From Aplysia californica (Eukaryota), in the NCBI RefSeq assembly GCF_000002075.1, contig NW_004797696.1, positions 235,668 to 299,667 on the forward strand: 64,000 nucleotides of DNA, given 5' to 3'. Shown here piece after piece: positions 1,332 through 64,000 of this stretch. The notes below the pieces were generated by a model. The model was not told the origin of the DNA. It ran no database searches and saw nothing but the letters and a program-made list of their open reading frames with translations. A program made the position numbers and the translations under genes. Each line of letters begins with the position of its first letter. The first letter of the stretch is position 1.

Positions 1332-2447
1332 GTGGGTCTTTAAACTCTAATGTCGCTTGTTTTGTTGTTGCTTTTAAATTTTCTGTTGTTTCTTAAATTA
1401 GAATTTGTTTTTCTTTCTTTTTAAACTTTAGTTCATGGAGGTGGATGTTCAAACTGCTTTTTTTGGTTTGTTTTTTAAATGTTCTAAAATAATTAAATAA
1501 TGCAGTTGGATGTCAAATCTGTGCTATTTGGGTTTTTGTTTTCCCAGGAAAGGGGGGTTCTTTTTTCTTTTTTAAAAATAATCAATGCAGATGGATATTC
1601 AAATTGTGTTGGATTTTTTTTTTTTTTTTTTGGGGGGGGGGGGTGCATATTTTCTCTTGGCTTTTTTTCTTTCCTTTCTGAAGTTATTGGTTTTGTTTTT
1701 TAAAAATTAGATTCACTGTGCATTGAAACCAAATCCTTTGCTGTTAATGTGTCTGTGTATTTATTCCCCCCTGCCCCCAACACCATCACCACAACACACA
1801 CACACATGTGTAATCTAAATGTTAATACCGTCCCCTTCAAAAGCAGGTGCTTTACTCCCTTTGACCCTGATTTTTTACAGCTTGAGTGAAAAGAAAGTAA
1901 AAGTTCCTCATTCTTCTTGAGACATCAACGATGTTTTATGCATTTCTCTCTCTGAATATATTCATACGGTACAAAATTTGATATTGGCTGAGGGCGTTGA
2001 TATTCTAGAGCTAATTGAGACCCACATTTTAGCAATGTGGTTCTCATTTTGATGCTACAACTTAATATTCTTGTGAGGGTAGAAATGTATGGAGATCTCA
2101 GACAAAATTCAGTTTTGTCTTTTATGTAATTTAAGACATCCCTAGGAGACATGGAAATCTGTCTTTTCTTGAATGAGAATTCTCTAGTCTATGCAGCGAT
2201 GCCATACTTCTATTATAATGTTGAATTGTTTTGTCAATATACTCAATTTAAGTGTATTGATAGTGTCTCTTCTTGAATCTGTTCCTAGTTGTTGAAATGG
2301 CTACAGTGAGATATACCGGAGTGTTGAGCAGCCTAAATTAGATTTATAGACTTCACAGGGAAGTTTGTTGTTTTTTAAGAATCTTTTTACCTGCCCCCAA
2401 CTCTAAATGTAACAAAATGTGTGTTTTGTGTACGAACTCTTCTGCAG

Positions 2448-2929
2448 AGGTCCGTCCCTTGGACAGTTTCCTGAAAATCCAAGAGATGCGTCAGTTAATC
2501 CTGGATGTGTTCATGGAGGTGGCCGGTCGGCACCAGGGCTTCGGCAACTGGCGCCACGCGCCCTCCATCCTGCTCCTGCTGACTCACATCCGGCAGGCGG
2601 GCGAGCGGGGCATCACCTACTTCCAGAAACTCAAGATGGAGGGCTGCGTGACCTTCTGCGACCTCCTCACCGAGATGCTGGACGCGCACAATTCCTCGGG
2701 CGAGCGGCGGCGGCTGCAGCAGCAACAGCACCCCCAGCAACAGCAACAGCCGCCGGCCCACCACCACCACCACCACCACCAGCAGCCGCCACCGCCGCAA
2801 CAGCAGCAGCAGCAGCAACAGCCACCGCCCCCGCCACCACCGCCCCAGCACCAACAGCAACAGCACCCATCCCAGCACCAGAGCCACCACCCCCACCCGG
2901 GACACCCCCAGCAGACTCTGCCTGAATGA
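2448..2929 (+). CDS. ER: Estrogen receptor last coding exon: LBD helices 9-12 (AF-2) plus a polyQ/H/P C-terminal tail
   Basis: tctgcag acceptor ends at 2447. EVRPLDSFLKIQEMRQ...LLLLTHIRQAGERGITYFQKLKMEGCVTFCDLLTEMLDAH resembles mollusc ERs (human ERa: [41 protein letters not shown]). Stop TGA at 2927-2929 is followed by in-frame TGA TAG. Confidence 0.95.
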
Positions 2930-39600: not shown

Positions 39601-40393
39601 GATCTGCGCACGCAAGGAGGTGCTATTCCTATTCTTCTTCTGGAAAAACGAAAGAGAGCTTCAAAACAGACTGCAGCGCCATCTGAAGCAACTTTAGAGC
39701 ATACTTCCTGCGGACACTTTTTAGGCTGAGTGGCCCATCTTGTCTTGTACTATCTTTGGCTATACTTCATTTGAAAATACCTTCAAAGGCTACAGCGAGA
39801 AAACAAGACAGCTCGACCTTGGCAGTAACCTATTTTGCATTTAGTCAACCAGCAAAAACTAAAATCCTTATGTAAAAAAAAATCCCTCCACGCCCCCCCC
39901 CCCAAACCCGTTCACACCTTACACACACACAGACACACACACACACATGCACACTCACACACGCACACTCACACACACACACACAAACACACAGGCCACT
40001 CCATTCGATTATCATCAACAAATCTCGAGAACTGAAACCATTCGGAGAAATTTAGAGCTCAAGTTTATTTTCCCAAACGTTCGGAGAAATAGAGCCGGCC
40101 TTCATAAAATGTCTCATAAGACCTTCTTTCTTTCATCATTGGCTTCCTTTCAATTTATTTGCATTAGAATCTGAAGAATATTTAGACTGACCCAGGGCAA
40201 AAATGTCTTTTCCATTTCCACTGACAATGAATAGGGCCTAGATCTAGGTGACACGAAGACAACTTTTTGAACTTACTGGCAGGTCCCGGTGTGTCATGCT
40301 CCATATTATCTGCCAGAAAATCAGAGCAATGCTGCACAATAGCAGGAACACCAGGAGCACCACGCACTTGTTTCTTCTCATTGGTTTCATCAT
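24132..40393 (-). CDS. Polypeptide N-acetylgalactosaminyltransferase-like protein (GT27, GALNT2-like), 15 coding exons, 549 aa, catalytic motifs degenerate
   Basis: Exons 40393-40277, 38251-38097, 37336-37232, 36791-36724, 36077-36012, 34825-34704, 33755-33668, 32723-32642, 31672-31569, 30900-30774, 30341-30249, 28425-28342, 27593-27467, 26598-26482, 24326-24132. All GT/AG and phase-consistent, 1650 nt total, no internal stop. Type II TM + GT-A domain (EIILVDDGS, RGGFDW, CGGQVEIIPCSRVG, LAEVW, CKNFKWFL..VYP) + ricin-B lectin (three QxW). Confidence 0.93.
25226..25437 (+). mobile_element. tRNA-derived SINE with target-site duplication
   Basis: A box TGGCTTAGTGG and B-box-like GGTTCGAG; tail GTGTTGATAGGGGCGTTAAACC; flanked by ATAGAATT direct repeats. 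Confidence 0.75.
26482..26598 (-). CDS. GALNT-like exon 14, ricin-B beta repeat
   Basis: EWSWRKRGVIVSSGMCLTSDMHSMQGFVQVQFCKDAENQ. Confidence 0.9.
26635..26816 (-). mobile_element. Family A short retroposon copy
   Basis: Reverse complement of the 807-986 element. Confidence 0.85.
27125..27435. repeat. (ATT)n microsatellite
   Basis: Long degenerate trinucleotide tract. Confidence 0.95.
27467..27593 (-). CDS. GALNT-like exon 13, ricin-B alpha repeat
   Basis: PLITDEVAYGSLKQGENCVDLDPGQLPLVAKLRRCEPGKDSQ. Confidence 0.9.
28342..28425 (-). CDS. GALNT-like exon 12
   Basis: VSSQRKLKGKLKCKNFKWFLTSVYPQL(Q). Confidence 0.93.
28726..29770. mobile_element. piggyBac-like non-autonomous element
   Basis: TTAA on both flanks; TIR CTCATTCGC(A/T)ACG. 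Confidence 0.75.
30249..30341 (-). CDS. GALNT-like exon 11
   Basis: GARRLAEVWLEEFKRFFYAVRPSARMQPLS(D). Confidence 0.93.
30774..30900 (-). CDS. GALNT-like exon 10 (VGH position reads VGL)
   Basis: LTMRAWMCGGQVEIIPCSRVGLIQAHGRELGSRLYIFNNYL(R). Confidence 0.93.
31569..31672 (-). CDS. GALNT-like exon 9 (Gal/GalNAc-T motif degenerate)
   Basis: SPTLCGSVLAVRKDFFSWLGKYDLNPMSKDIEDL(E) versus canonical tP.mAGGLFai....F..lG.YD.gMdiWGGENLE. Confidence 0.92.
32642..32723 (-). CDS. GALNT-like exon 8
   Basis: (G)FDWTLEHRWEDVPLAFHTNEDVTAPI(R). Confidence 0.92.
33668..33755 (-). CDS. GALNT-like exon 7
   Basis: SPKSLVSPILDSIDHVTFGYRSLPGIFRG (canonical vVsPiID.I...tF.Y). Confidence 0.92.
34704..34825 (-). 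CDS. GALNT-like exon 6 (DxH position reads DSL)
   Basis: RGAARVKGMQAASGDVIVFVDSLAEVNVNWLSPLLLRILQ. Confidence 0.93.
34906..35157. mobile_element. Fold-back mariner-like MITE inside a (TAA)n microsatellite
   Basis: TA|CGAG...CTCG|TA; the two halves are ~120-bp imperfect inverted repeats. Confidence 0.8.
36012..36077 (-). CDS. GALNT-like exon 5
   Basis: EDGHLLSQLPGVQVIRNEQPT (GALNT2-type EDG.LL....V.V.RN). Confidence 0.9.
36724..36791 (-). CDS. GALNT-like exon 4
   Basis: ILTKSSPVTLREIILVDDGSRN; tgcag/gtaagt junctions. Confidence 0.93.
37232..37336 (-). CDS. GALNT-like exon 3
   Basis: CGVVTSSIKHELPSPSIIVTFRDEDRSVLLRNIV (canonical LP.tSviItFHNEarS.LLRTv). Confidence 0.92.
38097..38251 (-). 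CDS. GALNT-like exon 2 (stem)
   Basis: SSFDVSLLQHLSYVE...YGYNIVNSRAVKPNRSLPDLRHA; matches the GALNT R.lPD.R stem motif; ttcag/gtagt junctions. Confidence 0.9.
39025..40092. mobile_element. TIR element containing a nested 500-bp TIR element (39260-39759)
   Basis: Outer ~70-bp inverted repeats CTATTTCTCCGAACG.../...CGTTCGGAGAAATAG; inner 31-bp TIR CCAAAGATAGTACAAGACAAGATGGG(T/C)CACT flanked by CTATA. Confidence 0.72.
40277..40393 (-). CDS. GALNT-like exon 1: cytoplasmic tail and type II transmembrane anchor
   Basis: MMKPMRRNKCVVLLVFLLLCSIALIFWQIIWSMTHRDLP, then gtaagt donor, phase 0. Confidence 0.85.
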
Positions 40394-41560
40394 AAATTGA
40401 AAGTGAGCTTACAATGGCATTTAATTTTATGCTATGTTTTGTCCAACAAAATAGCAACATCGTATCGATAGGTAGCTTTATTTTAGAAGGCAACCGCTGT
40501 TATGTCGTGGCCTTGTTCTTCTGAGTCTAGAGCTTCTATTGATGACGAGGATTACATCGGCCAGCGAATAGTGCTATCGTGGATAGAACTATGTCAAAAT
40601 CTACACGTTTCACTTATCACAGTGCGGGTGAGTGGTGTCCGAAGTAGCAACACATTTCCGGGCGCTCACTCTTATACAGCACTGGTGTGCAGCCACAAGG
40701 CCACTGTTCGCCTGCACCTCAGTTGCCAACACAGCACATCAATTTTTTGGCACCGCGTGTTCGGCTTGCTCTTTGAATGACGCCACGCCCCCATTTCCTA
40801 CATGCTTGCCTCCCTTATTGTTTACATACACAACATCAATGCTTGTCAAGGAAACGTAGCTGGGTAAGCTTGGAAGCGTATTGTGGAGAAAGATCAAAGG
40901 CGCAGTTCCCCTTAGTAACCAAAAGGAAACAATCGTAATCTAGAGAGACGAGAATATGTCATCTAGATCTACTTTGACGATTGGAAACATTAAAATATTT
41001 CAAAGGAGAAAAGAAGACCTCTATAGTATAGATCTAAGCTATTAAAGTAAAAATAGGCTAATAAGAATCTGCTGACTGCTGATGACTGATGAACGAATTG
41101 CACAGCCTTGGTTTTTGATTATTCTGATTTATCATACACAGGCAATGACCTTGGTATTTTCGATGGTTCTATTGTAGGCCAGGGTTTGTTTTGTTTTGTT
41201 TTTAAATGAAACTGACAGGTTTGCAGAAACACACCCAGTTCCCAAATCTCGTCATTAATTTTTTTCGAAACTGCAGCAGACCGTTGCGAAACCTACCTTT
41301 GTGCCAACCGAGTCCCAAGTAGCCTAAGCCTACGCTTTCATCACGAGTCGCTTTTTTGGAACTGACGTGACCGGTTCACCACTGTAGGTCGTGACCTGCC
41401 CTTTGAACTAGGCCTAGAAAGTAGAAAGTTATTGACTAAGCAAGCGTGGAAGTAATAAGGTGCCAGTGTGCGAGTGTCCTGCTGCAAACCAACCGGCTTT
41501 CGCATTGAAGCATTTTGCTTGCCTTTGCAATAATAGAACATCTTCTACTTGATCTTCAAA
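40394..41560. promoter_or_regulatory. Putative bidirectional promoter and 5' UTRs between the GALNT-like and methyltransferase genes
   Basis: Divergent ATGs ~1.17 kb apart; locally richer in CpG; GC-box GCCACGCCCC at 40782-40791; TGACGT half-CRE at 41363-41368. Confidence 0.55.
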
Positions 41561-41848
41561 ATGGCTCAGATTTTTGGAATTGATCATAAATATGTTGCTG
41601 TATCCACGGCGGCTTTGTCGATAGGAGTTGCAGCGTATTCCATGTACAAGTATAGGTCGATGGTAGCAGCAGTCAAGAATGTTGTACCCGGCTCTGAAGT
41701 CTACGAGTCTGAAAAGCTTCTGGGCGAATACTTAGTGTTTCATTTTGGTTCTCCAGAACAACTAATTCCTTATCCTTTCGGGCCCAAAGACGCTTTGGAT
41801 TTCCCCAAAAGATGTGCTGAGCTTTGTCTTAAACACTACAAACCACAG
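41561..41848 (+). CDS. OvoA-type methyltransferase exon 1 (N-terminal hydrophobic anchor + YE..L..YL.FH motif)
   Basis: caaaATGG Kozak-like context; MAQIFGIDHKYVAVSTAALSIGVAAYSMYKYR...HYKPQ|gtaaag. Confidence 0.9.
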
Positions 41849-44800
41849 GTAAAGTTTGTGGTCAGATATTGATTGTAGGCCTATTGTCTTTCCATATTAT
41901 AATAACAAATAGGCCTAAAGGCCTTATAACAATGACACAGCAAAAGGCAAAAGTTAGATCCAGACTACCGGTTATTTCACAATTTATAGATCTTGATTTT
42001 TACCTCCAATTATATAGGCTAGGCCCCTATTAATTTTAATTTTCCAGTGAAGGTTTGCAGTTTGCATACAAATTTTAGGGGCTTTTTTTCTATGGACCAG
42101 GGACATGGAGATTTTTTTCCCCGTTATGAGCTTTTGGTATCATTTGTATCACTTTGTTTTATATTTAAAAGCAAACAGTACGCTAAAATCGATCTGCTCT
42201 ATATGTGTATGGTTTTATGTATATGACCATATGTATGGGCTTTTGTGCATCATTATCAGGAGACAGAGCGATTGAACCAAGTTAAAGTCAAAAGTTCTCA
42301 TGAAAAGACTAGGAGTATAAAACTAAAACGACTCTATAATAGACAACTCGCTACCTAAGAATTACAAAGGTCTGACATTTTGGGCTGTTTTGAGTCACTA
42401 GAATCTAAGTCCATGAGGTCAGAAACCAAATACCTCGTCAGCTATCAAAATAGCAAGATTATTCAGGATATTTATCGAGATATTTAAAGAATTGCATTTT
42501 TGAAAAAGATTGACTTGTGAAACTCAAATTTTTTTTACATCAAATATCTCAAAACTAGGTACTGAGCTTTGTAATTTTACCGTAGTGATAAATTGATATA
42601 CAGTCGAACCTGCCATGACGACCACCTATAATACAGCCACCTGTGCAAATGGCTACTTTCCTTTCCCCCCCCTTGCTTTTTTTCTACATATTTTCACTGT
42701 GTAAAACAGTCACCTGTCGTTTAACGTGGCCTGGGACACCATATTTTATCACACAACCCCTACCACCCGAAATAATAACACAGTCTGTCTTAGACAGCCG
42801 ACCCGACGTTTTGACATAAATGATGTTTTGACTCCTGACGTTGTGGATGAGTCATCATTGTCCAATCACCTGTCGTTGTTAGATAGTCCCTCCAACCGAT
42901 CATGTTGCCTAGGCCCCTCCCACTGTTGACCAACAGGTAGCAATAAATTTTCAGCTGCTAGTGAGGTAAGCATGTGACCCTTCATAACCCATAAGCCCCA
43001 CCCACAGCTCATACACAAATCGTAAGTGAGATGAGTGTATAATCACTGTTTACCCAGTTTGCAACAAAGTAACAATTTTAACAATGGGCGTCAACATGAA
43101 TTTGTGACAGAAGCGTCTCTCGTTCTCTGAGTGATAGCGACCCATGTGTTTGTTTTTTACCATGGCACTTGGTCTTCCTTAATTGTCTGACACATTTCAT
43201 TTTATTGTCACCCTTGCACGAAATCAGCAACAAATAAAAAGCAAACGAAAACCAAACCAACAGAAACAACAACTACTACTACAACAACAACAACAACAAT
43301 GTGGCTATCTTCGGTTGGGATATTAGAAAGGAATGGTTTGTTTTCTTCAATTTGATCAATCCTTTTTGTTCCAAGTTCAATCCTACCTAAGACGGCCACC
43401 TGTCTTAGGGGGTCACTTTTCTCCTTGACAGTGGGTGGCCGTCTTACACTGGTTCGACTGTATATATTGTTACTTCAAGGCAGTGAATACCCTGTTTGTG
43501 CACAAGGAATGATTGAAAGTTTTACAGAACATTACTCGTGGCCTCCAACTCCAAACCCAAAGTTTGGTGGGCGGTTGGCGGGTGCTCTAGTGTGGTTTAC
43601 TCCTTCTTTCCTATCAAACATCTATCGTCCTTATCTACCCTTCTTCTTTTTTATGTTTATTACTCTCTTGTAACACCTTTAATCTTCTGGCGCTCATATG
43701 ACCTTTTGCAGTTGCGAACACCGTAAAACCTCTACTAAAACAAACAAAAACCTGAAGTTTTCTTATTGTATTGTTTATTGTTGCCTGGCATTGTCATTCT
43801 CATGCAAACCATTTTATTATCTCTTTGTGGCTGAACGTTCCTGCCTGTCGAACCTCTGTAAATGTAAAGTGGAATGGCAAGTGCTGCAGAAAAAAATTCC
43901 AAAAATTTTCCATCTCAGACAGGGGAATTTAGGGGGAGATTGTGGAGGGAAGTTTCAGAGGCTCAACCGGTGGGATCAAGGATCATTTATCCAGTCAGCA
44001 GGGCTGAGAGGTCAAGACTTCACGATTTTCAAGTGCTATCCCCTCTGACAATGGCATGCGTCAGTAATACTTGTTTATTGCCACCAATGCTTGCATCTCA
44101 TAGGACCATTGTTTTACCCATTAAAAAGAGACACGTTTGAACATCTCTTTTACTTCCACCCTTAGCCCCACCCATTGGTGTTATGAGCACAGTCAACCAA
44201 AGTCCAATATGCCACCCCTTCCGTGCATGTAACAACAATTCGAAGAACTCCTTTTTGGCTAGTTGTATGATAAGGGCAGCAGATATTGGTCAAACTAATT
44301 TCACAACTCTGGTCTCTGGCTACCCATGAAAGTTTGTGTGCTGGAGTGCCACTCAAGCTCTTTCACTTTCACAGGCACTGGTGAGATTTCCCACCCACAC
44401 CACCCTATCCGCACCACTAAGAGCTCGCATGGATGGGGTAATATCTACCCCCAAATTGCACACCTACTCCCTTTCCTTGCCTGGCGGCATGGCGTTAAGG
44501 TTAGAGCCAATGATAGAACCAAACTTGTTCATTTTGTTTCAAATGAGGGCTGAGAAGGCAAAGGATTTTTCGTCTTAGACGGAGTAAAAACCTCCCGAAG
44601 GGAAGAAATTTCTCTTTCCATTTCCGCATGAGACAGGTTTCCGTTTTGCAAAGGTAATTATGGAGGAACTTATCAAACGGGACCAGGAAGATTCCGTTGT
44701 GACAGGTTTCCATCTTACCCAGGTTTCTATTCATTATTATAACAGATTTGAGTGTACTTGATTAGAACAAAAATTATAGTATGAATTTGTTTTCCTTTGT

Positions 44801-47800
44801 TGTGGTACTGTGAACTGTACTTCTGAAAAGAACTGAAAATTCATTCTGAATTTTTTTTTCAGTTGTTGCCTTGTCACTTAGTTATACTGGTTTATTCACA
44901 ATCAATTATATGATCTAATTATGGTTTTTCCTGTTCATTTTATCTTAGGAAGGTCTTCCGGACAGGGCACTGGACATCGGATGTGCTGTTGGGCGCTCGT
45001 CTTTTGACCTGTCAAGAGGAGTGAAAGAAGTGATCGGCATTGACTATAGTCAGTCGTTTATAGATGCTGCAAACACATTGAAGCAAAATGGAGAAATGAG
45101 CTACCAACTTGTTCAAGAAGGGGATGTGTTCACCCAAGCTGTTGCCAAAGTAGAAAAGGATGTTGTAAGTTTCTTTCTTTGATAATAGCAAAAAAAACCC
45201 ACTTACTTACCTGGTTATAGGGTTGGAGAATAGGTATCATCAAAGGCAGTACAGTGCCTGAACTGCTCCTCCCTCCTCTTCAAGATCCATGACGGGATTG
45301 ACATTTTTATGTCAAGTTTTTTAACTTTGATGGAATCAATCATAACAGATTGGTACTCCGGAGAAATAGAAAAAGTTTTAACACAGATCTCAGTGTGTCA
45401 CATAGACACAGAGCTGTTAAAGTACTTTTAAAAAGGTACTTAAGTACAAATTTAAGTACAATCTAAAATATGTACTCAAGTACAGTAAAAGTACTTTCCT
45501 GTAAAATGTACTTGAGTACAAGTACTTTTTTTTTAAAAGTACTTAAGAGTACATTTTGAGTACTTTCTGCTAATATGCTAAAACACTTCAGGGCTAATGC
45601 AAAACATCATATAGAATAACATATCAAGTATATTTGACAAATTAGGCCATTTATTACTAATAACGTAAACTGTATACAAAATAATGGAAACACTGAACGT
45701 AGGTGGAAAAGGTCCGTGAAATTGAAAAAAAACAAACCACAAACAAACAGACACAACTAGTGAGTAAGTGATATTATGAATAGAACTTGTTTGAGCAAGA
45801 CAATATGATCAAATGTAAGTTAGTCTTAGAGGTCGGAAAGTAGGAAAAGTATCCAAATTGGAAAATGTAGAGACAAAGTTGCTCTTAAGAAAATATAAAA
45901 TTGATGAAAATGGCCTGCAAAAAAAATGGAAACGTGAATTGAATTCTTCATAAACAAATCCTCAAGGAATCAAGGTAGCCTTAAGCACAAACCACACAAA
46001 AAAGTTAAAAAGAAATTAAGGTAGCCTAAAAAATTGTTACATTGATATACATTGAGAACTCAGTTTCAGTTTCAATTGAAATTATAATAGTGGTAAGACA
46101 GATTTTGGTCACACTGTGTAGTCCACGGCGCCCACAGCAAACCAAAATAGGCCTACATGTAATTTCCTAGTCTAGTAAGTGTAGTGTAACCAAAAATTCT
46201 CTAGTAGTCTCCGCCTACGATCTCAGTGCTCGGGAGCAAGGGAAATACGGGATCTTAACCGACAAAGCCAAGGAAGAATCTACAGTGACCCATGAACTGA
46301 CGTGCCTCTGGGTGGGTTTATGACATATGGCGAGCAAAGAGTGGTCAAACTTGATGACCAATCACAGTAGCATGGTGGCATGAGGCATGCCATAATATTG
46401 TACCGTACACTCATTAGCATATCGTCTCGAGATCTTTATCTGCGTTTATCCAGTTGCCCCTCCCCTTTACCTGTCCAAAAATTGTAGCCTTTCATCTCTG
46501 ATTGAGTCCCCCCACCTTTGTCGTTACGTACCATTACGCTGTGACCGCACCAATTAAAATTCAGGTTGTCTTGCAAATTCGGGAATAGAGAAAAACTGCC
46601 TTCAACTTCAATGGTCAGGGAAGAGTTCACAGTTGAATGTGATCCTGCCTGGAGTGAACTTATAGGCCCTACCCACCCAGCGAGTGATGTCAGTTCAGGT
46701 GGCGAGCTCAGATGCGAGTGCGATGTTTGGGGAAAAGAAATGCATCGGTCAGTTCACATCTCGGTGTGATCGCGTCTGGGGATCATTGTACCGTTTCATT
46801 GTGTTTTACAACGCTTGTGATCACATTCACGAGAGTGGTTGATCTTTGACGCGACGGGCAGTTCTTTGATCTCAACTTTTAACTCTTGGTTGATCGGCTG
46901 TGCCCGCCCGGGTGTTTGTTCCGTAAATTATGATCAGAAATGCCGGCACTTACTCTTTCATTAAGCTTCAAAAGTGCTCAAAAGTACTTTTATAAAAAGT
47001 ATCGGAGTACAGACAAAATTGTGTCGATAGTGCAGTAAAACATCTACTCAATCAATCAATCAATCAGAGTACAGTAAAAGTACTGGTTCTCAAAATGTAC
47101 CGGAATACAGTAAAAGTACAAAAAATTGTAACATAAGTACAACTACTGGAGTACTTGTACTCCGTTACAACCAGCTCTGCATAGACACATGGCCAACCAA
47201 AACAATCTTTGGACCCTTACTTTTCTCTGTGGAAGGATGAGAAAGAAGACTTTCCTAAATAAAATACAAAAATCTAGTATAACCGCATGCCTTGTCTTCA
47301 CATATCTTTTGTTTCATCATTGAAACTTAAAAGACAACAGTCATTATAGTTTATTACAGTGGAATCCTGTTATAACGAGAGGTAGGGGACCGGTGCGAAA
47401 TGTCCCTTATAGCAGGATTCTCGTTACAAGGGATCCAGTTATAAATTCAAGGGAAATGGTAAAGTTGGCTTAATCTATGAGCTATGAGTCTGGCGTTCTG
47501 TTTATTCCTTTTTGTATTTCCCCTGATGATGATTTGTTCAACATGATATCTAGGTCTTACTTGATCAAATATTGAATCAGGTTTCTTTCTCTAGCACTAG
47601 CAATGTTGACAGCTCGGCGTTGGCGATCAGAAAGAAGGGGCTCTGGCTCTAGGCTAACTCGCCCGCTGTGTTGTCCCCCACCCCACCACACCCTGTGGTG
47701 TGTTGCGTCTGCTTGCGCACGTCACACAGTCACTCCATCTATCACAGCATTGTCACGATTGTGACCTCTCCATCCTGCACCAGAGAAGTGAGAGGCACGG

Positions 47801-50800
47801 TATGCCTAGATATTCTAGACTGGGCTGGCCTATCACGCGATGCGTTCTGCTTGTCTGCGCATGCCACACCCTCCCCACTCATTCGCTCCAGCCTCCATCG
47901 TTGGTTCACATGGGCTCTCCCATTCTTTGTTTCGCTGAATCACCAACAACTTTCTCAACTGGCGAGGTTTTATAATGTTTAATTGGTCTGTGCACTGTGC
48001 ACAGCAGCAGCAATATTCCGTTAAAATGACTCGCACGACTCTCTGATTGCGCAATAGCAGTATTTTATTTACAAAGATAAAGAAGGAGAAAAAACGGGGT
48101 TTTAGAATAGTGTCTTTATAACAGACTTCTCGTTGTTTCAGGACTCGTTATAAGTGGACTCCACTGTACCTTCCAAGTGTGGCTTGAAATAAGAAGTTGA
48201 ATGAAGTAAGGTATGATTATTTGCTTAAAGTGTGGTTTCTCTTCATAACATTTTAATCATATATTCATTATAAGATTACTTTGTTATTCATTGCACTCCT
48301 TTGGTTCCTACAAGTTGCTCATGCTCAGGTAGGTAGGCCAACTGATGGACATGAAAAGCAGTCAATGGGAAGTCATTAAAAGAAGAGAAGTTTATAAAGT
48401 ACAAAGAAACAATTTTAATGAACAAGGTCATTAGGTCTGTGTTTTGACGTTTTGTTAAAACGACCGTTAAATTTCTTTCTTTCTTTCTTTTTTCCGAAAC
48501 AGGACCGAAGCCGAGTCAGTTTTGAACAAGGCGATGCTTGTGATTTAAGATCATCACTGGGCCAGTTTGGTGTGATACTTGCTGCAAATCTGGTCTGTAG
48601 ACTCCACCATCCTAAGGAATTCCTGAAGAGGCTGACATCACTGTTGCCTAACAGAGGAGGAATCCTGGTGATAACAGCCCCGTATACTTGGTTAAGAGAT
48701 TTTGCGAATAAGGTGAATGTTATGAGACTTTGTTCGTGTGTGGTTGGTGGGTGCTCTGGTGTGGTTTGCTTCTTCTTTCGTATCAAGCATCTATCGTCCT
48801 TATTTCCCCTTTTTCTTTTTTATGTTTGTTACTCTCTTGTACAAGTAACACCTCTGATCTTCTGCGCTCATAAATCATATGACCTTATGCAATTGCAAGC
48901 GCCGTAAAACCTTTACTAAAACTAAAACTAAAGACTTTGTTCCTCCTTTTTATTCCATGTGTAGGTTTTCCTCTGAGGGGCAGTGTCCCAACAGTTAGGT
49001 TCCAGAGAAGAGTCGTGTCTGAAATGGGCTATTATAATTGATTTTGTGGATTGATATGGGTCAGGGGTCAGTTGGATTTGGTTTTTTTCTTATTATAATA
49101 TTATCTCTCTGGGTTTTCCGTTCTCATCTATCAACAGGTAAAATTTTGCTAACTGGAATGCTATTAAGATTCAATTCCTTTTTTGGGGGGTCCTGTGTCC
49201 TGATTTGGTGCCAGATATTTGGTCGCTTTTAAGCACAAGGGGCTATCCCGAAAAATGCTGTTTTGAAAAGATCGAAGGTAAAGTTTTTGCCCATTGTTCA
49301 GTTTCTTTAAAAGACAAGGAGAGTTTTCTCTACTACCAAACAAATATACTCACCAATGAAACCAAACTTCCCCTATAGGTAGGGCAATGCCCACTTTTGG
49401 TGTAGGTCAAGATTTCTGGAAACCCCCAAAATCTGGGTTGGCCCGCTTGTCCTTAAAAGTAAAAGCGACCATTTGTAGTTTGCATAGAAAAATGTGTTTA
49501 CTTGATGAAACTTATTATTCTTCAAGAAAGAAACTGGAAACACGAAAATTGTTTGAAAATAGATGATGATAATGATGACCAAATTGTTGAGAACAATGTG
49601 CAAGATGAATCTTGATATTAGTTTTATTCTTCATTTGATGCCAACTCAAGGATACCATCAGTCTGTCCTGAGGGGCAGGACTCAACAGTCATTCCCTACT
49701 CCATGCATAGGATGGCCAAAATTTTTCAATTAGTTTCACCTTCTTTCCTGTTCTGTAACCATGTTCTGTTGTCTGCTTTTGTCTCCACTTTCTGCCCCCA
49801 CCCCCACCCGCCCTGTCCTCTGGGCTCCTGATTCTTTCTGCAGCCTTTCTACTGCTACTCCTTATCTCCTTCTTACTGCTGTCTTTCAGCCACACCCATG
49901 ATCTTAGGGTAGGTAAGATCTAACACCTAGCCTTCTCGGATAAGGATGAAAAATCTCAGAGGTCTTGTGTGCAAGTTGCGCACATTAAAGATCCCTTGGT
50001 CGTCCAAAATTGATAAGAGTAGGCTTCAGCTGCCACCTGAACAAAACTGAAAAATAATTCCTACCAAACTAAAAATAGAAGAATGCAGAATCATCCATTG
50101 CCTGACAAGCCTCCTACTATGCTTTCAGAACTTCAAAACAGTGAGAAGAATGTGGCAAATAACTTTTTAAATGATTTTCATAGTCAGTACCATTGTGTTC
50201 AGAGGTTGACCATCGCTGAATGTGTGTGCTTCCAAGCCATTGCTTTCTGCAATTAGTCACAGATCCCAAGGTACTTATATTATAGTGGGACCTTGTCAAA
50301 AGCCTGAAAAACCATGTCCAGTCGACCAAAGAATTACAAAGACGCCTCTTCTTAAAATGACAGCAGCAAATTCATCAATTATGTACAACAAGGCAATGCA
50401 TGTAAAGCATGCTGTGGTGGAGAACCAAAAATGGAATTGTATCTGGTGTCCAATCAGATACCATGGGCATTAAAAACCCTCTCTCTTTAAAATGGTCCTA
50501 CATTTTAGAAGCAACAATTAATGGAAAGGGAGGACAAGATAGGCCTACATGTAGTGTTAAGTGCTCAAAACGTTGTATCAATTACATCCCTATTCTACCC
50601 TATGTGATAACATACAACTGCTAATGGTATGATGAAATATGGTGAAGATCAAATCTGTAGATTGAAAGCAAAAGAATAAAAACATAATGTAATACGTTTA
50701 TGTTTGTTAAGTGGAGTCCTCTTAACTGAAATCTGCAGGACCTCCATATTTTCTTCGCTTTTGCCAGGTGCTTGGTTAAGAGAGGTTGCTCAAATACAAC

Positions 50801-51953
50801 AACAAAATTGAGGATTTTATTTGCTTTTGGTTTATAGCTGTTTCCAGATTAAACATTTTCAATTTAAATGGACTCCAATGTATAAATTTCTCTATATATG
50901 TATTCTGTCAAATTAATTCTTATTCTTATTTTTTATTAATTAGAAAAAGACTTTGTCATGCTTGTACAAAATTGTTTCCACATTGTGCAAGCATACATTT
51001 TCTTGTAATAAATTATCCTTCAGTAAAGTGGTTTATCTTCACGGGGCACCACTTGTAACTGTTATAAATATGACATAAGAGGTGACCTTTGCTCTCAAGC
51101 TCCCCTATGTCTGTGAAATATCTTTGCTTGTTTACACTCGTATCAACTGTCCTTTCTACATTTATATATATGATATCTTCTATGATCTGTCCTGTTTTAG
51201 CAATGTAACGAAGCATTGTCACTGAGTGGTCTGTTCCTGCTATTTCTTCCTCTTTTTTTTTAGTGCTTGTATTTCTGTTGTCTGAATTTGTTCCAAGAAA
51301 AAATTAGGTTGTGTGCTTTGGTATATTCCATGTTTTTGTACACATCATGTGACAGATGAACACTCACAGTAAAGCTTCAGAAGAGAATATGAGCTCTAGA
51401 AATACTTTACTGCATGAACCAAGGCTGAAGGAGGGGATAAGAAGAAGCCCGTGATGATTTCTCTCAACTCAGTTTGGTTTATAGATTGTTGACTACTGAT
51501 GTAAACCCTTTTTTACGGTCACAAAGTATCTGCTGTATGTGTACCTTAATGTATTATGTATAAGGGTTAAATTAGTACCATGTGTGTAGATTCTATGTGT
51601 GGGTGTGGAGAAGATAGACAGGAGGTTAATTCTGAAGTAAACATTTCAAATTTTCAAGGTGTTTTAACTGGATGTTGTTGAGATGCTTTTTTTTTTTTCA
51701 CTTTTAGTCAGAAAGTAGATTGAGGTTGTATAGTTTTTGTACTTCATTATTGTTTGTTCATCTCCAGAATGAATGGCTTGGTGGGTACGTTGGTGCCGAT
51801 GGTCAAGCTGTTACAGGATTCCAAGGCCTTCAGAAAGAACTGGGGCCATACTTCGACCTTGTGGAAGAAGTCAACATGCCTTTCTTCATCAGGGAGACGG
51901 CTCGCAAGAACCAGTGGACTGTAGCACATGCGACTGTTTGGCGTAGGAAGTGA
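41561..51953 (+). CDS. Stand-alone class I SAM methyltransferase homologous to the OvoA C-terminal (mercaptohistidine N-methyltransferase) domain; 4 exons, 299 aa
   Basis: Exons 41561-41848, 44949-45164, 48503-48712, 51768-51953; all phase 0, GT/AG, 900 nt. Motifs VYESEKLLGEYLVFHFG, RALDIGCAVGRSSFDL, GIDYSQSFI, FEQGDACDL, ANLVCRL, TAPYTW, WLGG and PFFIRETARKNQWTV are recognisable as the OvoA C-terminal methyltransferase family. Confidence 0.92.
42601..43460. mobile_element. pogo/Tc1-mariner-like MITE
   Basis: TA|CAGTCGAACC...GGTTCGACTG|TA; subterminal GCCACCTGT repeats. Confidence 0.8.
43566..43750 (+). mobile_element. Family A short retroposon copy
   Basis: Near-consensus full-length copy with A-rich tail. 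Confidence 0.85.
44949..45164 (+). CDS. OvoA-type methyltransferase exon 2 (SAM-binding motif I)
   Basis: EGLPDRALDIGCAVGRSSFDLSRGVKEVIGIDYSQSFIDAANTLKQNGEMSYQLVQEGDVFTQAVAKVEKDV; cttag/gtaagt junctions; absent from the supplied ORF track. Confidence 0.93.
45409..47179. mobile_element. Non-autonomous hAT DNA transposon with Tol2-like ends
   Basis: Perfect 8-bp TSD CATAGACA (45401-45408, 47180-47187); termini CAGAGCTG...CAGCTCTG; dense subterminal AAGTAC/GTACTT repeats. Confidence 0.88.
47357..48166. mobile_element. pogo/Tigger-like MITE
   Basis: TA flanks; left TIR CAGTGGAATCCTGTTATAACGAG versus right TIR (reverse complement) CAGTGGAGTCCACTTATAACGAG. Confidence 0.8.
48503..48712 (+). CDS. 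OvoA-type methyltransferase exon 3
   Basis: DRSRVSFEQGDACDLRSSLGQFGVILAANLVCRLHHPKEFLKRL...GGILVITAPYTWLRDFANK. Confidence 0.93.
48738..48932 (+). mobile_element. Family A short retroposon copy
   Basis: Full-length copy ~25 bp downstream of the methyltransferase exon 3 donor. Confidence 0.85.
51768..51953 (+). CDS. OvoA-type methyltransferase exon 4 and stop
   Basis: NEWLGGYVGADGQAVTGFQGLQKELGPYFDLVEEVNMPFFIRETARKNQWTVAHATVWRRK*. Confidence 0.93.
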   Translation, partial: NEWLGGYVGADGQAVTGFQGLQKELGPYFDLVEEVNMPFFIRETARKNQWTVAHATVWRRK

Positions 51954-60563: not shown

Positions 60564-62419
60564 GGAGTGGAGTGTGGCCTCCGCTATCCCACTAGAACCA
60601 TGTCCTCTCAGCAGCATAACACCTTCTCCTACAGAAGCTCCCCCTAAACTCTCTCAGCACGGGGAGATACCCAACCCATCTGATGTGACCGTTGTAGTTT
60701 TACCATCTTTGCCCTGACACCAGAAAGCACCAATGACACCCCTGTTGCTGACAACCTACATCTATTATCAGAAGTAAACTTTTACCTTTCACTCAATTTT
60801 CGTTGACATGAAAACAAAATTTGAGAAATTTTTTTAACACGATGATTGATTTTTTTCCCCCTATTGACAAACGTGAAGTCCCTCCTGGTTGAGTTTTGTC
60901 TGTTCTAAGTTTGGTTTCCTATTAAACTCTACAGTACACGAAATGCAACAAAAAACAGACGAACTAACTTACGTTGCGGAAAAAGTTGGCCTTATTTAGG
61001 CACTTCAGTGAACGCGCTCACTATAGCATGATTTGGCTTCGGAAAGTCCCATTGGGTTTTGTTTCCGGACATGACGTCTCATCGCGACAGTGGGTTCAAA
61101 CAGCCCATATTTTTGTTTAATTTAGGGGACCAACATTCAAGTCTGATACATGTCTTCAAAGATCTTTGGATGGCCTTCAAGACGTTTTTTTTCCCAGGAG
61201 GATGTGCGACTAATGAGTCTCGAGATATTTTAAGTTGAAAAATAGACAATTTTTAACCTTTGATTTTTCATAAATTTTCTTGTCACATTTTTTTCAAACT
61301 ACCCTTGTTGGTAAACCATTCTTTGTTCTTCCAGAAAACGTATAAATGGTTATCGTAGAAGTCTTACCTTGGCTAGTGTAGTCTTACCCTTTTATCAACC
61401 AAATCCGCGAAAACCTAGCTGAACCCTTCCACCGTGACATAGCGCAGAGTCGTGACGTCACGCATTTCGCCTTGAGCTTTTGGCTTCCTCTCTTCATTGT
61501 TTTAAATTTACGAGACAAGGAAATGCTTTGCCGAGAGATTTTTAAACTTCTGTTTAAAAAGTTAATCAATTTTGGTAATGTTTTATAATCACTGACCTTA
61601 CATTGCGCCTTTGTTCATTCGATAGTATAAAGAAAACGAGACTTTTTAGACCAAAGTATTTCCTTTTCGCTGAGCTCCCCCCTCCCTCCTTTTTTACCCT
61701 TTCATTGCGTAGGGCCTAGATCTAGTAGATTTATGAAGAGTCTGGACTCGTGTTGTTATCAGAGTCAAAAATTAAATTGAGACGCCTATTAAAGTATCTG
61801 ATGCAATTATTTACTTGATACAAGTTTCTTAGGTCTATTGTTAGTACTGATCCAGATTTTCTTTCTTTTCTGTCGCATGAAAAAACCGAAAAATGCTGTG
61901 TACTGGAATGTGNNNNNNNNNNNNNNNNNNNNNNNNNNNNNNNNNNNNNNNNNNNNNNNNNNNNNNNNNNNNNNNNNNNNNNNNNNNNNNNNNNNNNNNN
62001 NNNNNNNNNNNNNNNNNNNNNNNNNNNNNNNNNNNNNNNNNNNNNNNNNNNNNNNNNNNNNNNNNNNNNNNNNNNNNNNNNNNNNNNNNNNNNCTCCTAT
62101 TTTCATAATCGTACCTCTTTTTTCTCCTCCATCCCACATTACCTGCTCTTCACAACTGCATACACATTTTCTCTATTATATCCTTCTTGTCGTCTTATTT
62201 CTCTTATACTCGCCACTGCCGCCATCCTTCAACGACTCACGGTATTAGTAGCGGAAGCCTATTACTCTTTTCTACTAATGAAACAACCCTGAAGAAAGAT
62301 GTCAGTTGCAACAAAGTGATCACTTTTGCTCCTCAGTTCTTACTTTACTTTACTTTTCCCTTTCTCTGGTATCCTAATGATGTCGAGGGGAGGAGCAGGT
62401 TTGGGAGTCTGTGATAGGT

Positions 62420-64000
62420 ATGTTAATTAGTTTTATTGTTCCAGGACCTTTTTATCCCATCCAGTCAAGTCTTTCTTGATCTTCCTCTTGATTTAAAGCC
62501 AATTCGCGGGTGTGGTAAGCTCTAGCCGCTAGTTGTTTCTGTGGCATTCTGGTTAGATGTCCGAACCATTGGACTCTTTGACGATCTAATAAATTAACTA
62601 CTTGTGAACGAATGGTCTCGTTCCTTATGCGCTTTCCTTTGGTGGCGTTGGTGGTTTTGCGGAGACACCTAATTTCGGGTGCATTGATTTTTCTTTATCA
62701 TTCCTTGTTTAGAGACCATGTTTGACACTGGTTTGTTAATGTTGATCTGAAGATTCTATTCATGAGCTGGGATTTCACTTCAGTTGGGATGTTCTTGTGA
62801 CTGAGAAGGGCTGCTAGCTGGTAGGTCACTGCATTTGCCTTCATAGTTCTTGTTTGTTTTTCTTTGTCCATACGCCCATCTAGTGTGAAGATGCTTCCCA
62901 AATATTTAAATTCCTCTACTTGTTGGAGTTGTGTTCCGTCAATAAGGATATTGAGTTTCCCTGGTTTTTTCTAGCCTTCATAACTTCCGTTTTTGAAATA
63001 GAGATTTTCATGTTTAGGTGTTTACATTCCTCATTAATTAATTTTGTGGTGTGTTTTTGTGATTCCTCTTCATCTGTATTAAATGTACTCTGGTCATCAG
63101 CAAATACTAGCTTGCTCAGTTCATTGATGTTGTCATTTGCTGCTTTCGTGATCTTATCCATGTAAGTGATGAAGAGAAGCGTAGAGAAAACACACCCTTG
63201 TCTCACCCCAGACCTGAAGGGGAAACAGTCCGATAGTCCTTCTGTTGACCTTACGGCACACAGGCTGTTTTTATAAAGCGCCATGATGTTCTCCAGCAAT
63301 TGTCCTTTTACAACATATTCCTCTAAGGCTACCCACTGGCTTCAGCCACTGACTGAAGTATCTTTAGGCCATTCCCAAAGAGGGGACGTTTTTCGTTCTA
63401 ATGCACAGTAGAATTGTAACTGGACTGATCGAACAATGTCATGCTCATAACCGTGCCGGAACTACAACAGGGAACTGCTACTTTTTCTTTCCTAATCCTT
63501 ACTGTCGTCATTTTCCTCTACTTCTTTTGTATGTTTGTCACACTCTTGTGACCCACTTTTTCCGGGATGCCTTTATAGTCGAAGCAGACTTTGTGCTTTT
63601 GAAGCTAGAGAGGTGAGCAGAGTAAATCTGATTCCCTGTAAGGACTCCTCTGTTGACACCCACCCCTTGGCGCTCATATGACCTTATGCAGTTGCGAGTG
63701 CCGTAAAACTTCTACTAAAACCTCTAAGACTTCCCAAAGTTGACATCTATTTATCCTGTCGAACGCTTTTTCGTGTTCCACGAAAACGATATTGAGGTCT
63801 TGTCATTTCCAATGGCAGTCTCACAGAACTGTGCGAATGCAAAAAAGTGTCAGTACAGCCCCTGCCTTTTCTGAATCCAAACTGGGGTTCATTGAGTTGA
63901 GTCTCTACAATCGGTCTCATTCTCATTTCCAGTATATTGGCTAACGTTATATCCACACAGCTGAGAAGGGATATTCCTCAGTAGGCTCTGTGTTGTTTTT
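62420..64000 (-). mobile_element. Decayed non-LTR retrotransposon reverse transcriptase (RTE-like), interrupted by an insertion
   Basis: QFGFRKGRGCTD, GVRQGCVFSTLLF, FADDQ, ISISKTEVM and KYLGSIFT motifs, with frameshifts. Confidence 0.88.
63336..63720 (+). mobile_element. 385-bp retroposon with Nimb/I-like tail inserted into the RTE-like LINE
   Basis: Flanked by 16-bp direct repeats CCTCTAAG(G/A)CT(A/T)CCCA at 63320-63335 and 63721-63736; ends GCGCTCATATGACCTTATGCAGTTGCGAGTGCCGTAAAAC. Confidence 0.8.

What the first reader, a model, noticed from the sequence alone, without database searches (positions are those of the whole stretch)
41561..51953. Stand-alone, membrane-anchored OvoA-type methyltransferase in an animal genome
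Seen: a 299-aa, 4-exon gene made only of a SAM methyltransferase domain with the motif set of the OvoA C-terminus. It is preceded by a moderately hydrophobic segment and basic residues (YVAVSTAALSIGVAAYSMYKYR). No DinB or FGE-sulfatase sulfoxide-synthase exons fit upstream, because another gene starts 1.2 kb away on the opposite strand. Established: animal OvoA is normally a three-domain fusion whose last domain methylates the imidazole ring of 5-thiohistidine to give ovothiol A; N-alpha-methylated ovothiols B/C and other thiohistidine products occur in marine invertebrates. Inference: this is a separate, possibly organelle-anchored (mitochondrial outer membrane or ER) enzyme of thiohistidine/imidazole methylation, an undescribed branch beside canonical OvoA. 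From memory, the FHFG...PFGPKDALDFP and RETARK.QWTV segments look more like bacterial stand-alone family members than fused OvoA, which raises ancient paralogy or horizontal transfer followed by intron gain.
Basis: partly seen in the sequence, partly recalled or inferred. Interest (0 to 1): 0.85.

Follow-up and report, generated by a model that had tools for sequence, protein, structure and literature searches.

The report
Stand-alone ovothiol-type methyltransferase of animals
This sea-hare gene is a real, expressed, free-standing relative of the enzyme that adds the last methyl group to the marine antioxidant ovothiol. It is conserved across animals that have the ovothiol synthase OvoA and may do the step that textbooks assign to OvoA itself.

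Summary
Four phase-0 exons with GT..AG borders (41561-41848, 44949-45164, 48503-48712, 51768-51953) encode 299 aa. They are identical to RefSeq "uncharacterized protein LOC101856202 [Aplysia californica]". RNA-derived contigs from three studies carry the exon 1-2 splice and begin 100-470 nt upstream of the ATG, with no upstream exon.

The protein scores 235 bits on TIGR04345 (cut-off 170). Its model superposes on bacterial OvsM, OvoM and the OvoA_Th2 methyltransferase domain (TM 0.92-0.93). It keeps every family-invariant residue.

It is not peculiar to this genome. Orthologues of about 295-305 aa, with the same N-terminal helix and basic flank, form one well-supported holozoan clade. They were found in the animal groups reported to have OvoA and not in bony vertebrates, insects or nematodes.

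Aplysia has OvoA on another contig. The methyltransferase-like exons of that gene have lost several family-invariant residues.

Best reading: an OvoM-type N-pi-methyltransferase, probably membrane-anchored, that makes ovothiol A from 5-thiohistidine in trans. Recent horizontal transfer is not supported. The substrate and the membrane anchoring are inferred, not shown.

Caveat: the closest prokaryotic relatives are stand-alone genes of Verrucomicrobiota, and their genomes mostly lack any OvoA/EgtB-type synthase.

The parts
41092..41560 (+). Transcribed leader (5' UTR). RNA contigs begin between 41092 and 41457 and are colinear with the genome. No upstream exon is spliced on.
   Evidence: table 8: X14 record 17 from 41092, X4 record 26 from 41327, X1 record 1 from 41457
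41561..41848 (+). Exon 1, residues 1-96. It holds the N-terminal helix with its basic flank, a linker, and the first family block (Y48 E49 ... Y57 ... H61) of the methyltransferase domain.
   Evidence: splice 41848/44949 seen in 3 runs
41591..41647 (+). Coding for residues 11-29, the moderately hydrophobic helix proposed as a membrane anchor. K-Y-R follows it.
   Evidence: KD mean 1.28; same position in orthologues; model helix 9-39, pLDDT 90-95 over residues 11-30
44949..45164 (+). Exon 2, residues 97-168. It holds SAM motif I (L-D-I-G-C-A-V-G-R) and the acidic residue D128 after strand 2.
   Evidence: (TIGR04345 72.3 bits, profile 43-106)
48503..48712 (+). Exon 3, residues 169-238. It holds the G-D-A-C block, the A-N-L-x-C-R-L block and P-Y-T-W.
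   Evidence: (70.5 bits, profile 115-181)
51768..51953 (+). Exon 4, residues 239-299 plus the stop codon. It holds W-L-G-G and the C-terminal I-R-E-T-x-R-K-x-Q-W block.
   Evidence: (50.4 bits, profile 184-242)

Best explanation
The gene encodes a free-standing member of the thio/selenoimidazole N-pi-methyltransferase family (TIGR04345). That family comprises the C-terminal domain of bacterial OvoA and the stand-alone enzymes OvoM and OvsM. Residues 48-299 form the catalytic SAM-dependent domain. Residues 9-39 form a conserved helix of moderate hydrophobicity with a basic C-terminal flank, which probably tethers the enzyme to a membrane with the catalytic domain facing the cytosol.

Most likely it takes 5-thiohistidine and transfers a methyl group from SAM to the ring N-pi, giving ovothiol A. 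The 5-thiohistidine would come from the OvoA sulfoxide synthase encoded on another contig, followed by a lyase.

Shown: the gene model, its expression and splicing, family membership, fold, conservation of the family's invariant residues, a holozoan-wide orthologous clade, and OvoA elsewhere in the genome with altered methyltransferase-like exons.

Inferred: the substrate, the division of labour with OvoA, and the membrane anchoring.
For: - Family and fold. TIGR04345 scores 234.9 bits against a cut-off of 170, over the full profile. PDB sequence matches are OvsM 2.6e-57, OvoM 5.8e-50 and OvoA_Th2 1.1e-47. The AF2 model has pLDDT 94.5. Foldseek's top ten hits are all OvsM, OvoM or OvoA_Th2 (E about 1e-30, TM 0.92-0.93 normalised to the stand-alone OvsM/OvoM chains, rmsd 1.8-2.5). 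The next fold scores 1e-9.
- Active-site conservation. Y48, E49, Y57, H61, C108, D128, S130, F133, F175, D179, N197, R201, P228, W241, R280, E281, K285 and Q287 are kept at 94-100% in 86 holozoan, 77 Verrucomicrobiota-type and 137 fused OvoA sequences.
- Expression. The GT..AG joint 41848/44949 appears in contigs of 3 runs from 3 studies, with no upstream exon.
- Pathway context. This is the only locus in the genome that matches TIGR04345 at E <= 0.001. Two OvoA N-terminal gene copies lie on C216.
- OvoA's own domain. The minus-strand OvoA copy has methyltransferase-like exons with D105 to H, C108 to T, S130 to C, F133 to L, N197 lost and the Y57/H61 block altered. Fragments from three other sources share the exon-1 substitutions at 55-78% identity.
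- Distribution. Orthologues occur in sponges, placozoans, anthozoans, annelids, molluscs, a brachiopod, a nemertean, echinoderms, hemichordates, amphioxus, tunicates, lamprey and cartilaginous fishes. None from bony vertebrates, insects or nematodes appeared among the best 120 hits, a list that reaches down to bacteria. This mirrors the published OvoA distribution and its two losses (PMC4768315).
Against: - No enzyme assay exists for any animal member.
- Sea-urchin OvoA is reported to keep its SAM-binding residues (PMC4768315). The fused domain may therefore be active in other phyla, which would make this enzyme redundant or differently specialised.
- The closest prokaryotic homologues are stand-alone genes of Verrucomicrobiota. 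Of 40 such genomes, 35 showed no full-length OvoA/EgtB-type synthase. Membership of this sequence neighbourhood does not therefore guarantee an ovothiol role.
- The N-terminal helix falls below the usual hydropathy threshold for a transmembrane segment.
- Absence from bony vertebrates and ecdysozoans rests on a top-120 list, not on genome searches.
Confidence: 0.6

Rival explanations
1. The fold and family are the same, but the substrate differs. The enzyme might methylate another histidine-derived or imidazole or thiol compound. Candidates are 5-selenohistidine as in OvsM, a thiohistidine from the diet or from symbionts, a further methylation towards ovothiol B/C, or a substrate shared with the Verrucomicrobiota enzymes. 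OvoA's own domain would then make ovothiol A.
For: - The best solved match is OvsM, the selenium enzyme (44% identity against 37% for OvoM).
- Thirty-five of 40 genomes holding the nearest prokaryotic homologues lack a full-length OvoA/EgtB-type synthase.
- In 52 of 80 such loci the gene sits next to a conserved unknown gene with a NicX/M29-like fold.
- The enzymes for N-alpha methylation of ovothiol are unknown (PMC8623360).
Against: - All family-invariant residues outside the SAM motifs are the same as in fused OvoA domains. This argues for the same substrate class.
- The NicX-like partner was not found in Aplysia with a single protein or with a profile.
- An N-alpha methyltransferase would need a different pocket. 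In the ovoselenol preprint OvsM does not methylate histidine.
Confidence: 0.25
2. A redundant paralogue. Animal OvoA is fully bifunctional, and the stand-alone enzyme only adds capacity or a second location for the same reaction, with no essential role.
For: Sea-urchin OvoA is reported to keep its SAM-binding residues. Both genes coexist in many phyla.
Against: - Orthologues from many animal phyla keep the gene, including its N-terminal helix. That is hard to reconcile with dispensability.
- In Aplysia the fused domain has lost residues that are invariant in 300 family members.
Confidence: 0.12
3. A recent bacterial acquisition by horizontal transfer followed by intron gain, or bacterial contamination of the assembly.
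For: Identity to Verrucomicrobiota proteins is 44-51%. The family is mainly prokaryotic.
Against: - The gene has three spliceosomal introns, and the first splice is confirmed in RNA-derived contigs.
- It lies in a 1-Mb-scale animal contig with animal repeats.
- Animals plus an ichthyosporean form one clade (SH-aLRT 97), separate from the Verrucomicrobiota group.
Confidence: 0.03

Closest known systems
OvsM, 5-selenohistidine N-pi-methyltransferase (PDB 9bxh/9bxj/9bxk, Marinimicrobium koreense; activity shown for the Halomonas utahensis enzyme in bioRxiv 10.1101/2024.04.10.588772)
   Same: A stand-alone protein with the same fold (TM 0.92-0.93, rmsd 1.8-1.9, 44% identity). It is the best sequence match among solved structures (197.5 bits). 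The family blocks are the same.
   Different: OvsM is bacterial, about 245-267 aa, and has no N-terminal helix. It works with the selenoxide synthase OvsA and the selenosugar genes SenB/SenC. That context was not looked for here beyond the OvoA-type genes on C216.
OvoM, stand-alone 5-thiohistidine N-pi-methyltransferase (PDB 9bxl/9bxm/9bxn, Sulfuricurvum sp.)
   Same: A stand-alone enzyme of the ovothiol pathway with the same fold (TM 0.92, 37% identity). This is the activity proposed here.
   Different: OvoM is bacterial and has no N-terminal extension. From my recollection of the structure paper, which I could not read here, it accompanies OvoA proteins that lack the methyltransferase domain. 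Aplysia OvoA still carries an altered methyltransferase-like domain.
C-terminal methyltransferase domain of bifunctional OvoA (PDB 8khq OvoA_Th2; Erwinia tasmaniensis OvoA)
   Same: The same family model, TIGR04345 (fused proteins score 180-208 bits). The invariant residues are the same. Identity is 36-37%.
   Different: That domain is fused behind the DinB and FGE-type sulfoxide synthase. Here it is a separate gene on a different contig from OvoA, with its own promoter region and a different N-terminus. None of the introns mapped in Aplysia OvoA's methyltransferase-like exons coincides with an intron of this gene.
Stand-alone TIGR04345 homologues of Verrucomicrobiota (uncharacterised)
   Same: They are the closest prokaryotic sequences (44-51% identity over residues 47-299) and are stand-alone. 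Seventy-eight of the 80 best loci have no synthase within 6 kb.
   Different: They have no eukaryote-type N-terminal helix. They form a separate group in the tree. They are usually next to a conserved gene with a NicX/M29-like fold, which was not found in Aplysia. Most of their genomes lack OvoA.

Membership tests
Thio/selenoimidazole N-pi-methyltransferases (TIGR04345: OvoA C-terminal domain, OvoM, OvsM) | The whole protein scores above the curated cut-off of the family model and covers the full profile | tested here: met
   234.9 bits against a cut-off of 170; profile 1-242 on residues 48-298
Thio/selenoimidazole N-pi-methyltransferases (TIGR04345: OvoA C-terminal domain, OvoM, OvsM) | Three-dimensional fold of the solved family members | tested here: met
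   Model pLDDT 94.5. The top ten Foldseek hits are OvsM, OvoA_Th2 or OvoM at E about 1e-30 (TM 0.92-0.93 to the OvsM/OvoM chains). Unrelated methyltransferases score 1e-9.
Thio/selenoimidazole N-pi-methyltransferases (TIGR04345: OvoA C-terminal domain, OvoM, OvsM) | SAM-binding motif I and the acidic residue after strand 2 | tested here: met
   D105, G107, C108, G111 and D128 are present and are 94-100% conserved in all three groups compared
Thio/selenoimidazole N-pi-methyltransferases (TIGR04345: OvoA C-terminal domain, OvoM, OvsM) | Family-specific invariant residues outside the generic SAM motifs (Y48, E49, Y57, H61, F133, F175, N197, R201, W241, R280, E281, K285, Q287) | tested here: met
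   All are present in the window's protein and conserved in holozoan, Verrucomicrobiota-type and fused OvoA sets. Their roles in substrate binding are inferred, because I could not read the structure paper.
Thio/selenoimidazole N-pi-methyltransferases (TIGR04345: OvoA C-terminal domain, OvoM, OvsM) | Catalyses N-pi methylation of 5-thio- or 5-selenohistidine | not testable with these tools
   Needs an enzyme assay
Thio/selenoimidazole N-pi-methyltransferases (TIGR04345: OvoA C-terminal domain, OvoM, OvsM) | A source of 5-thiohistidine (an OvoA-type sulfoxide synthase) in the same genome | tested here: met
   Two sets of TIGR04344 exon matches on contig C216, running up to profile position 443 of 444. 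Aplysia OvoA is listed as XP_005099570.1 in PMC4768315.
Canonical bifunctional OvoA | DinB and FGE-type sulfoxide synthase domain on the same polypeptide | tested here: not met
   There is no TIGR04344 match on the window's contig. Transcript contigs start 100-470 nt upstream of the ATG with no upstream exon.
OvsM (ovoselenol pathway) | Co-occurrence with OvsA and the selenosugar genes SenB/SenC | not tested
   Only OvoA-type synthase exons were sought and found. SenB/SenC were not searched.
N-terminally signal-anchored membrane proteins (ER or mitochondrial outer membrane) | One N-terminal hydrophobic helix long enough to span a bilayer, with a basic C-terminal flank | tested here: inconclusive
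   A helix at 9-39 is predicted with high confidence. The basic flank is present, and its position is conserved from cnidarians to chordates. The hydropathy means of 1.0-1.5 are below the usual 1.6 threshold.
N-terminally signal-anchored membrane proteins (ER or mitochondrial outer membrane) | Membrane association shown experimentally | not testable with these tools
   Needs fractionation or imaging

The most novel reading that the evidence does not exclude
In sea hares, and possibly more widely in animals, OvoA may not be the bifunctional enzyme of the textbook scheme. Its C-terminal methyltransferase-like domain has lost residues that are invariant in the active family. The final N-pi methylation that makes ovothiol A would then be done by this separate OvoM-type enzyme, tethered by a conserved N-terminal helix. 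That enzyme tracks OvoA across animal phylogeny, including the losses in bony vertebrates, insects and nematodes.
Probability: 0.3. Interest if true: 0.72.

Novelty: new variant of a known kind. Interest (0 to 1): 0.62.

Why it matters
Ovothiol A is a major redox buffer of marine invertebrate eggs and embryos. Its animal pathway is usually drawn with OvoA doing both the first and the last step.

A conserved, separately encoded enzyme for the last step would change which gene has to be studied, knocked down or used as a stress marker. It would give the pathway a possible membrane location. It would also explain why Aplysia OvoA's C-terminal domain is so unlike the bacterial one.

The gene also assigns a plausible function to an "uncharacterized protein" present in many animal phyla. 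Finally, it points to an unexplored two-gene module in Verrucomicrobiota that may make a related compound without any known sulfoxide synthase.

Tried and rejected
- **Upstream synthase exons: rejected.** The genome-wide TIGR04344 search puts them on another contig, and RNA contigs show no upstream splice.
- **Recent horizontal transfer or contamination: rejected.** The gene has introns, the splice is confirmed, and the holozoan clade is separate from the bacterial groups.
- **Full-length animal OvoA proteins could not be retrieved.**
  - A search with the fused protein P0020 returned only bacterial and protist OvoA.
  - None of my 137 fused sequences is animal-like.
  - A helper alignment of Aplysia OvoA exons to P0020 (A1) was too badly stretched to use as a profile.
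  - A search with the first methyltransferase-like exon of Aplysia OvoA returned three unnamed genomic fragments only.
  - So I could not test whether the fused domain is altered in other phyla.
- **The tree backbone is unresolved.** Many forks are below 80, so no sister group of the animal clade is claimed.
- **The look-up of encoding contigs has no record of P0221**.
- **Pfam found nothing on ORFs of the neighbouring gene or of other window genes**, apart from a reverse-transcriptase fragment.
- **The conserved Verrucomicrobiota neighbour gene was not found in Aplysia**, with a single protein or with a profile.
- **No complex prediction was run.** Nothing here argues that the enzyme binds OvoA.
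- Whole-protein work used P0221, which a search returned and which equals the four exon translations.
- **Assembly gaps.** N runs in the plus-strand OvoA copy were left as they are.


Full report
**1. The observation**

The window holds four open exon segments on the plus strand with canonical borders:
- 41561-41848 (ATG at 41561, donor GTAAAG)
- 44949-45164
- 48503-48712
- 51768-51953 (ends in TGA)

All four are phase 0 and sum to 299 codons. I searched the exons one by one, by reference. Exons 2, 3 and 4 each match NCBIfam TIGR04345 (ovoA_Cterm) at 72, 70 and 50 bits over consecutive parts of the profile. Pfam sees only generic methyltransferase families.

A search of 1.84 billion cluster representatives with exon 3 gave 634 hits. 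These included stand-alone proteins of about 300 aa and fused OvoA proteins of 700-800 aa. A follow-up search with the nearest full-length hit returned P0221, RefSeq "uncharacterized protein LOC101856202 [Aplysia californica]". P0221 is 100% identical to the four exon translations, end to end.

All whole-protein work used P0221.

**2. Expression and gene limits**

Contigs assembled from four public runs were laid on 40400-46300. Their small total sizes mark them as probable RNA runs, and the intron-skipping contigs show those contigs come from RNA.

Three runs from three studies carry the joint 41848/44949, with GT..AG ends. Their contigs begin at 41457, 41327 and 41092, colinear with the genome. 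The X1 contig runs on for about 600 nt beyond exon 2.

No contig splices an upstream exon onto exon 1. A genome-wide scan finds OvoA N-terminal (TIGR04344) exons only on contig C216, not on the window's contig C426.

Another transcript contig ends at 40717, and a minus-strand ORF starts at 40493. This fits a head-to-head neighbour. I could not name that gene.

**3. What the protein is**

- *Family.* P0221 scores 234.9 bits on TIGR04345 (cut-off 170) with residues 48-298.
- *Solved relatives by sequence.* Only three distinct PDB sequences match: OvsM (5-selenohistidine N-methyltransferase, 197.5 bits), OvoM (5-thiohistidine N-methyltransferase, 173.4 bits) and the bifunctional OvoA_Th2 (166 bits).
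- *Fold.* An AlphaFold model built on 70 homologues has mean pLDDT 94.5. It shows a long helix at 9-39, a less confident linker, and then the methyltransferase domain. Foldseek's first ten hits are all OvsM, OvoA_Th2 or OvoM (E about 1e-30; TM 0.92-0.93 on the OvsM/OvoM chains; rmsd 1.8-2.5; 36-44% identity). The next best fold, nicotinamide N-methyltransferase, is at 1e-9.
- *Invariant residues.* I compared 86 holozoan stand-alone proteins, 77 Verrucomicrobiota-type stand-alone proteins and 137 fused OvoA domains. The residues that are invariant in the family, including those outside the generic SAM motifs, are kept at 94-100% in all three sets and are all present here. They are Y48, E49, Y57, H61, C108, D128, S130, F133, F175, D179, N197, R201, P228, W241, R280, E281, K285 and Q287.

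That argues for the same substrate class as the characterised enzymes. It remains an inference, because I could not read the structure paper that assigns the roles of these residues.

**4. The N-terminus**

In orthologues from cnidarians to chordates, and in an ichthyosporean, a 19-residue Ala/Ser/Thr/Gly-rich segment sits at about residues 10-30. Lys/Arg follows it, and the catalytic domain starts at residue 35-53. The hydropathy means are 1.0-1.5, with a few up to 2.1.

The positional conservation and the confident helix support a functional anchor or targeting helix. The moderate hydrophobicity leaves open whether it spans a membrane. From general knowledge, moderate hydrophobicity with a basic C-terminal flank is typical of signal anchors of the mitochondrial outer membrane. 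With the basic flank on the C-terminal side, the catalytic domain would face the cytosol. Bacterial homologues of about 250 aa lack this extension.

**5. Distribution and descent**

Orthologues of 290-306 aa are annotated, all as uncharacterised or generic methyltransferase proteins, in:
- sponges, Trichoplax and Nematostella
- annelids, many molluscs, Lingula and a nemertean
- echinoderms, hemichordates, amphioxus and tunicates
- lamprey, chimaera, sharks and rays

No bony vertebrate, insect or nematode appears among the best 120 hits of a shark query, although that list runs down to bacterial proteins.

The published OvoA distribution covers the same groups, with losses in nematodes, insects and bony vertebrates, and it lists an Aplysia OvoA (PMC4768315). 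The match of the two profiles, including the shared losses, is the main comparative argument for a role in the ovothiol pathway. Its weakness is that absence is read from a capped hit list.

In a maximum-likelihood tree of 132 domains, all animal proteins plus the ichthyosporean form one clade (SH-aLRT 97). The Verrucomicrobiota proteins form another group (93). Fused domains are scattered, and the backbone is unresolved.

Within Aplysia, I mapped two introns in OvoA's methyltransferase-like exons. Neither coincides with any of this gene's three introns. This fits an old separation and gives no support to recent transfer or recent duplication.

**6. OvoA in the same genome**

Contig C216 carries two convergent sets of OvoA N-terminal exons. 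The plus-strand copy is interrupted by assembly gaps, which I left alone.

Downstream of the minus-strand copy lie methyltransferase-like exons at C216:307038-306736 and 305657-305406, and probably at 304293-304144. Their scores on TIGR04345 or on my family profile are very low: 24-30 bits, 8 bits and about 0 bits. Both clear exons have good splice sites and join in frame.

At positions that are invariant in about 300 family members they carry other residues:

| Family residue | In Aplysia OvoA's exons |
|---|---|
| D105 | H |
| C108 | T |
| S130 | C |
| F133 | L |
| N197 | lost |
| G-D-A block | not recognisable |
| Y57 / H61 block | reads I / E in my manual alignment; the profile aligns this block differently |

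Three fragments from other, unnamed sources share the exon-1 substitutions at 55-78% identity. So the domain is conserved in its altered form rather than decaying.

I infer that the fused domain in this lineage is unlikely to be a normal 5-thiohistidine methyltransferase. The stand-alone gene is the only locus in the genome that matches TIGR04345 at E <= 0.001. For sea urchin, the literature states that the SAM-binding residues of OvoA are conserved. The inference may therefore not extend to all animals, and I could not fetch other animal OvoA proteins to check.

**7. A caveat from bacteria**

The 80 closest prokaryotic loci are almost all from Verrucomicrobiota, at 44-51% identity. Seventy-eight are stand-alone genes with no sulfoxide synthase within 6 kb.

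| Result in the 40 genomes searched | Genomes |
|---|---|
| Fused OvoA | 2 |
| OvoA-like synthase without a methyltransferase domain | 1 |
| EgtB-like synthase | 2 |
| No full-length OvoA/EgtB-type synthase detected | 35 |

Many of these genomes are metagenome bins and may be incomplete.

In 52 of the 80 loci the gene directly upstream is a highly conserved protein of about 385 aa with no Pfam, NCBIfam or PDB sequence match. Its model (pLDDT 91.5) resembles the iron dioxygenase NicX and M29 aminopeptidases. Aplysia has no detectable homologue.

The sequence neighbourhood of the animal clade thus includes enzymes whose pathway is unknown. This keeps a different-substrate reading alive.

**8. 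Comparison with what is known, and novelty**

Stand-alone bacterial members of this family are known. The ovoselenol preprint shows OvsM activity and its order of action (bioRxiv 10.1101/2024.04.10.588772). The PDB holds OvsM and OvoM structures released in 2025. A 2026 preprint cites OvoA proteins without a methyltransferase domain.

Full-text searches found no paper on a stand-alone animal enzyme. Papers on animal ovothiol assign the methylation to OvoA.

I therefore file this as a new variant of a known kind: a holozoan form with an N-terminal helix that coexists with OvoA.

**9. Verdict**

- Confidence in family membership is very high.
- Confidence that it makes ovothiol A from 5-thiohistidine is about 0.6.
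- Confidence that it replaces, rather than supplements, OvoA's own domain is about 0.3-0.4 in Aplysia's lineage and lower for animals in general.

Noticed in passing
L023-L102 (e.g. L045:4617-5768:+), directly upstream of the stand-alone methyltransferase in Verrucomicrobiota loci: A highly conserved protein of about 385 aa (mean column identity 70%) precedes the methyltransferase in 52 of 80 loci. It has no Pfam, NCBIfam or PDB sequence match. Its model resembles the non-heme iron dioxygenase NicX and M29 aminopeptidases. Most of these genomes lack any OvoA/EgtB-type synthase, so this pair may be an undescribed pathway.
   Followed up: partly
G000:C216:272449-289941 (+) and 318949-307871 (-): Two convergent copies of the OvoA sulfoxide-synthase gene lie about 18 kb apart. 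The plus-strand copy is broken up by assembly gaps, so its integrity cannot be judged. The minus-strand copy continues into altered methyltransferase-like exons (307038-306736, 305657-305406).
   Followed up: partly
window 43552-43748 (intron 1); similar translated stretches near 805-1197 and 48730-48900, and in C216 introns: A short interspersed repeat is present in many copies. Summed contig depth there is 4-5 orders of magnitude above the flanks in all four runs. Many spurious joints and loose ends cluster at 43600-43750.
   Followed up: no
window 40182-40717 (-): First exon of a head-to-head neighbour. A 2-kb transcript contig ends at 40717, and an ORF starts at 40493 on the minus strand. 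That leaves about 0.4-0.7 kb between the two transcript starts, which suggests a shared bidirectional promoter region. The gene was not identified (no Pfam match).
   Followed up: partly
window 2417-2929 (+): An ORF whose start reads like the C-terminal part of a nuclear-receptor ligand-binding domain, followed by long Gln/Pro/His runs. Pfam gave no hit at E <= 0.01, so this rests on my reading only.
   Followed up: no
window 62916-63299 (-): A reverse-transcriptase fragment (PF00078, 45 bits), probably a retroelement remnant. An assembly gap lies nearby at about 61850-62100.
   Followed up: no
L024, L069, L102 (Verrucomicrobiota loci): A few bacterial homologues align with the animal protein from residue 1-15 onward. 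They may carry an N-terminal extension of their own. I did not check whether it is hydrophobic or an artefact of ORF extension.
   Followed up: no
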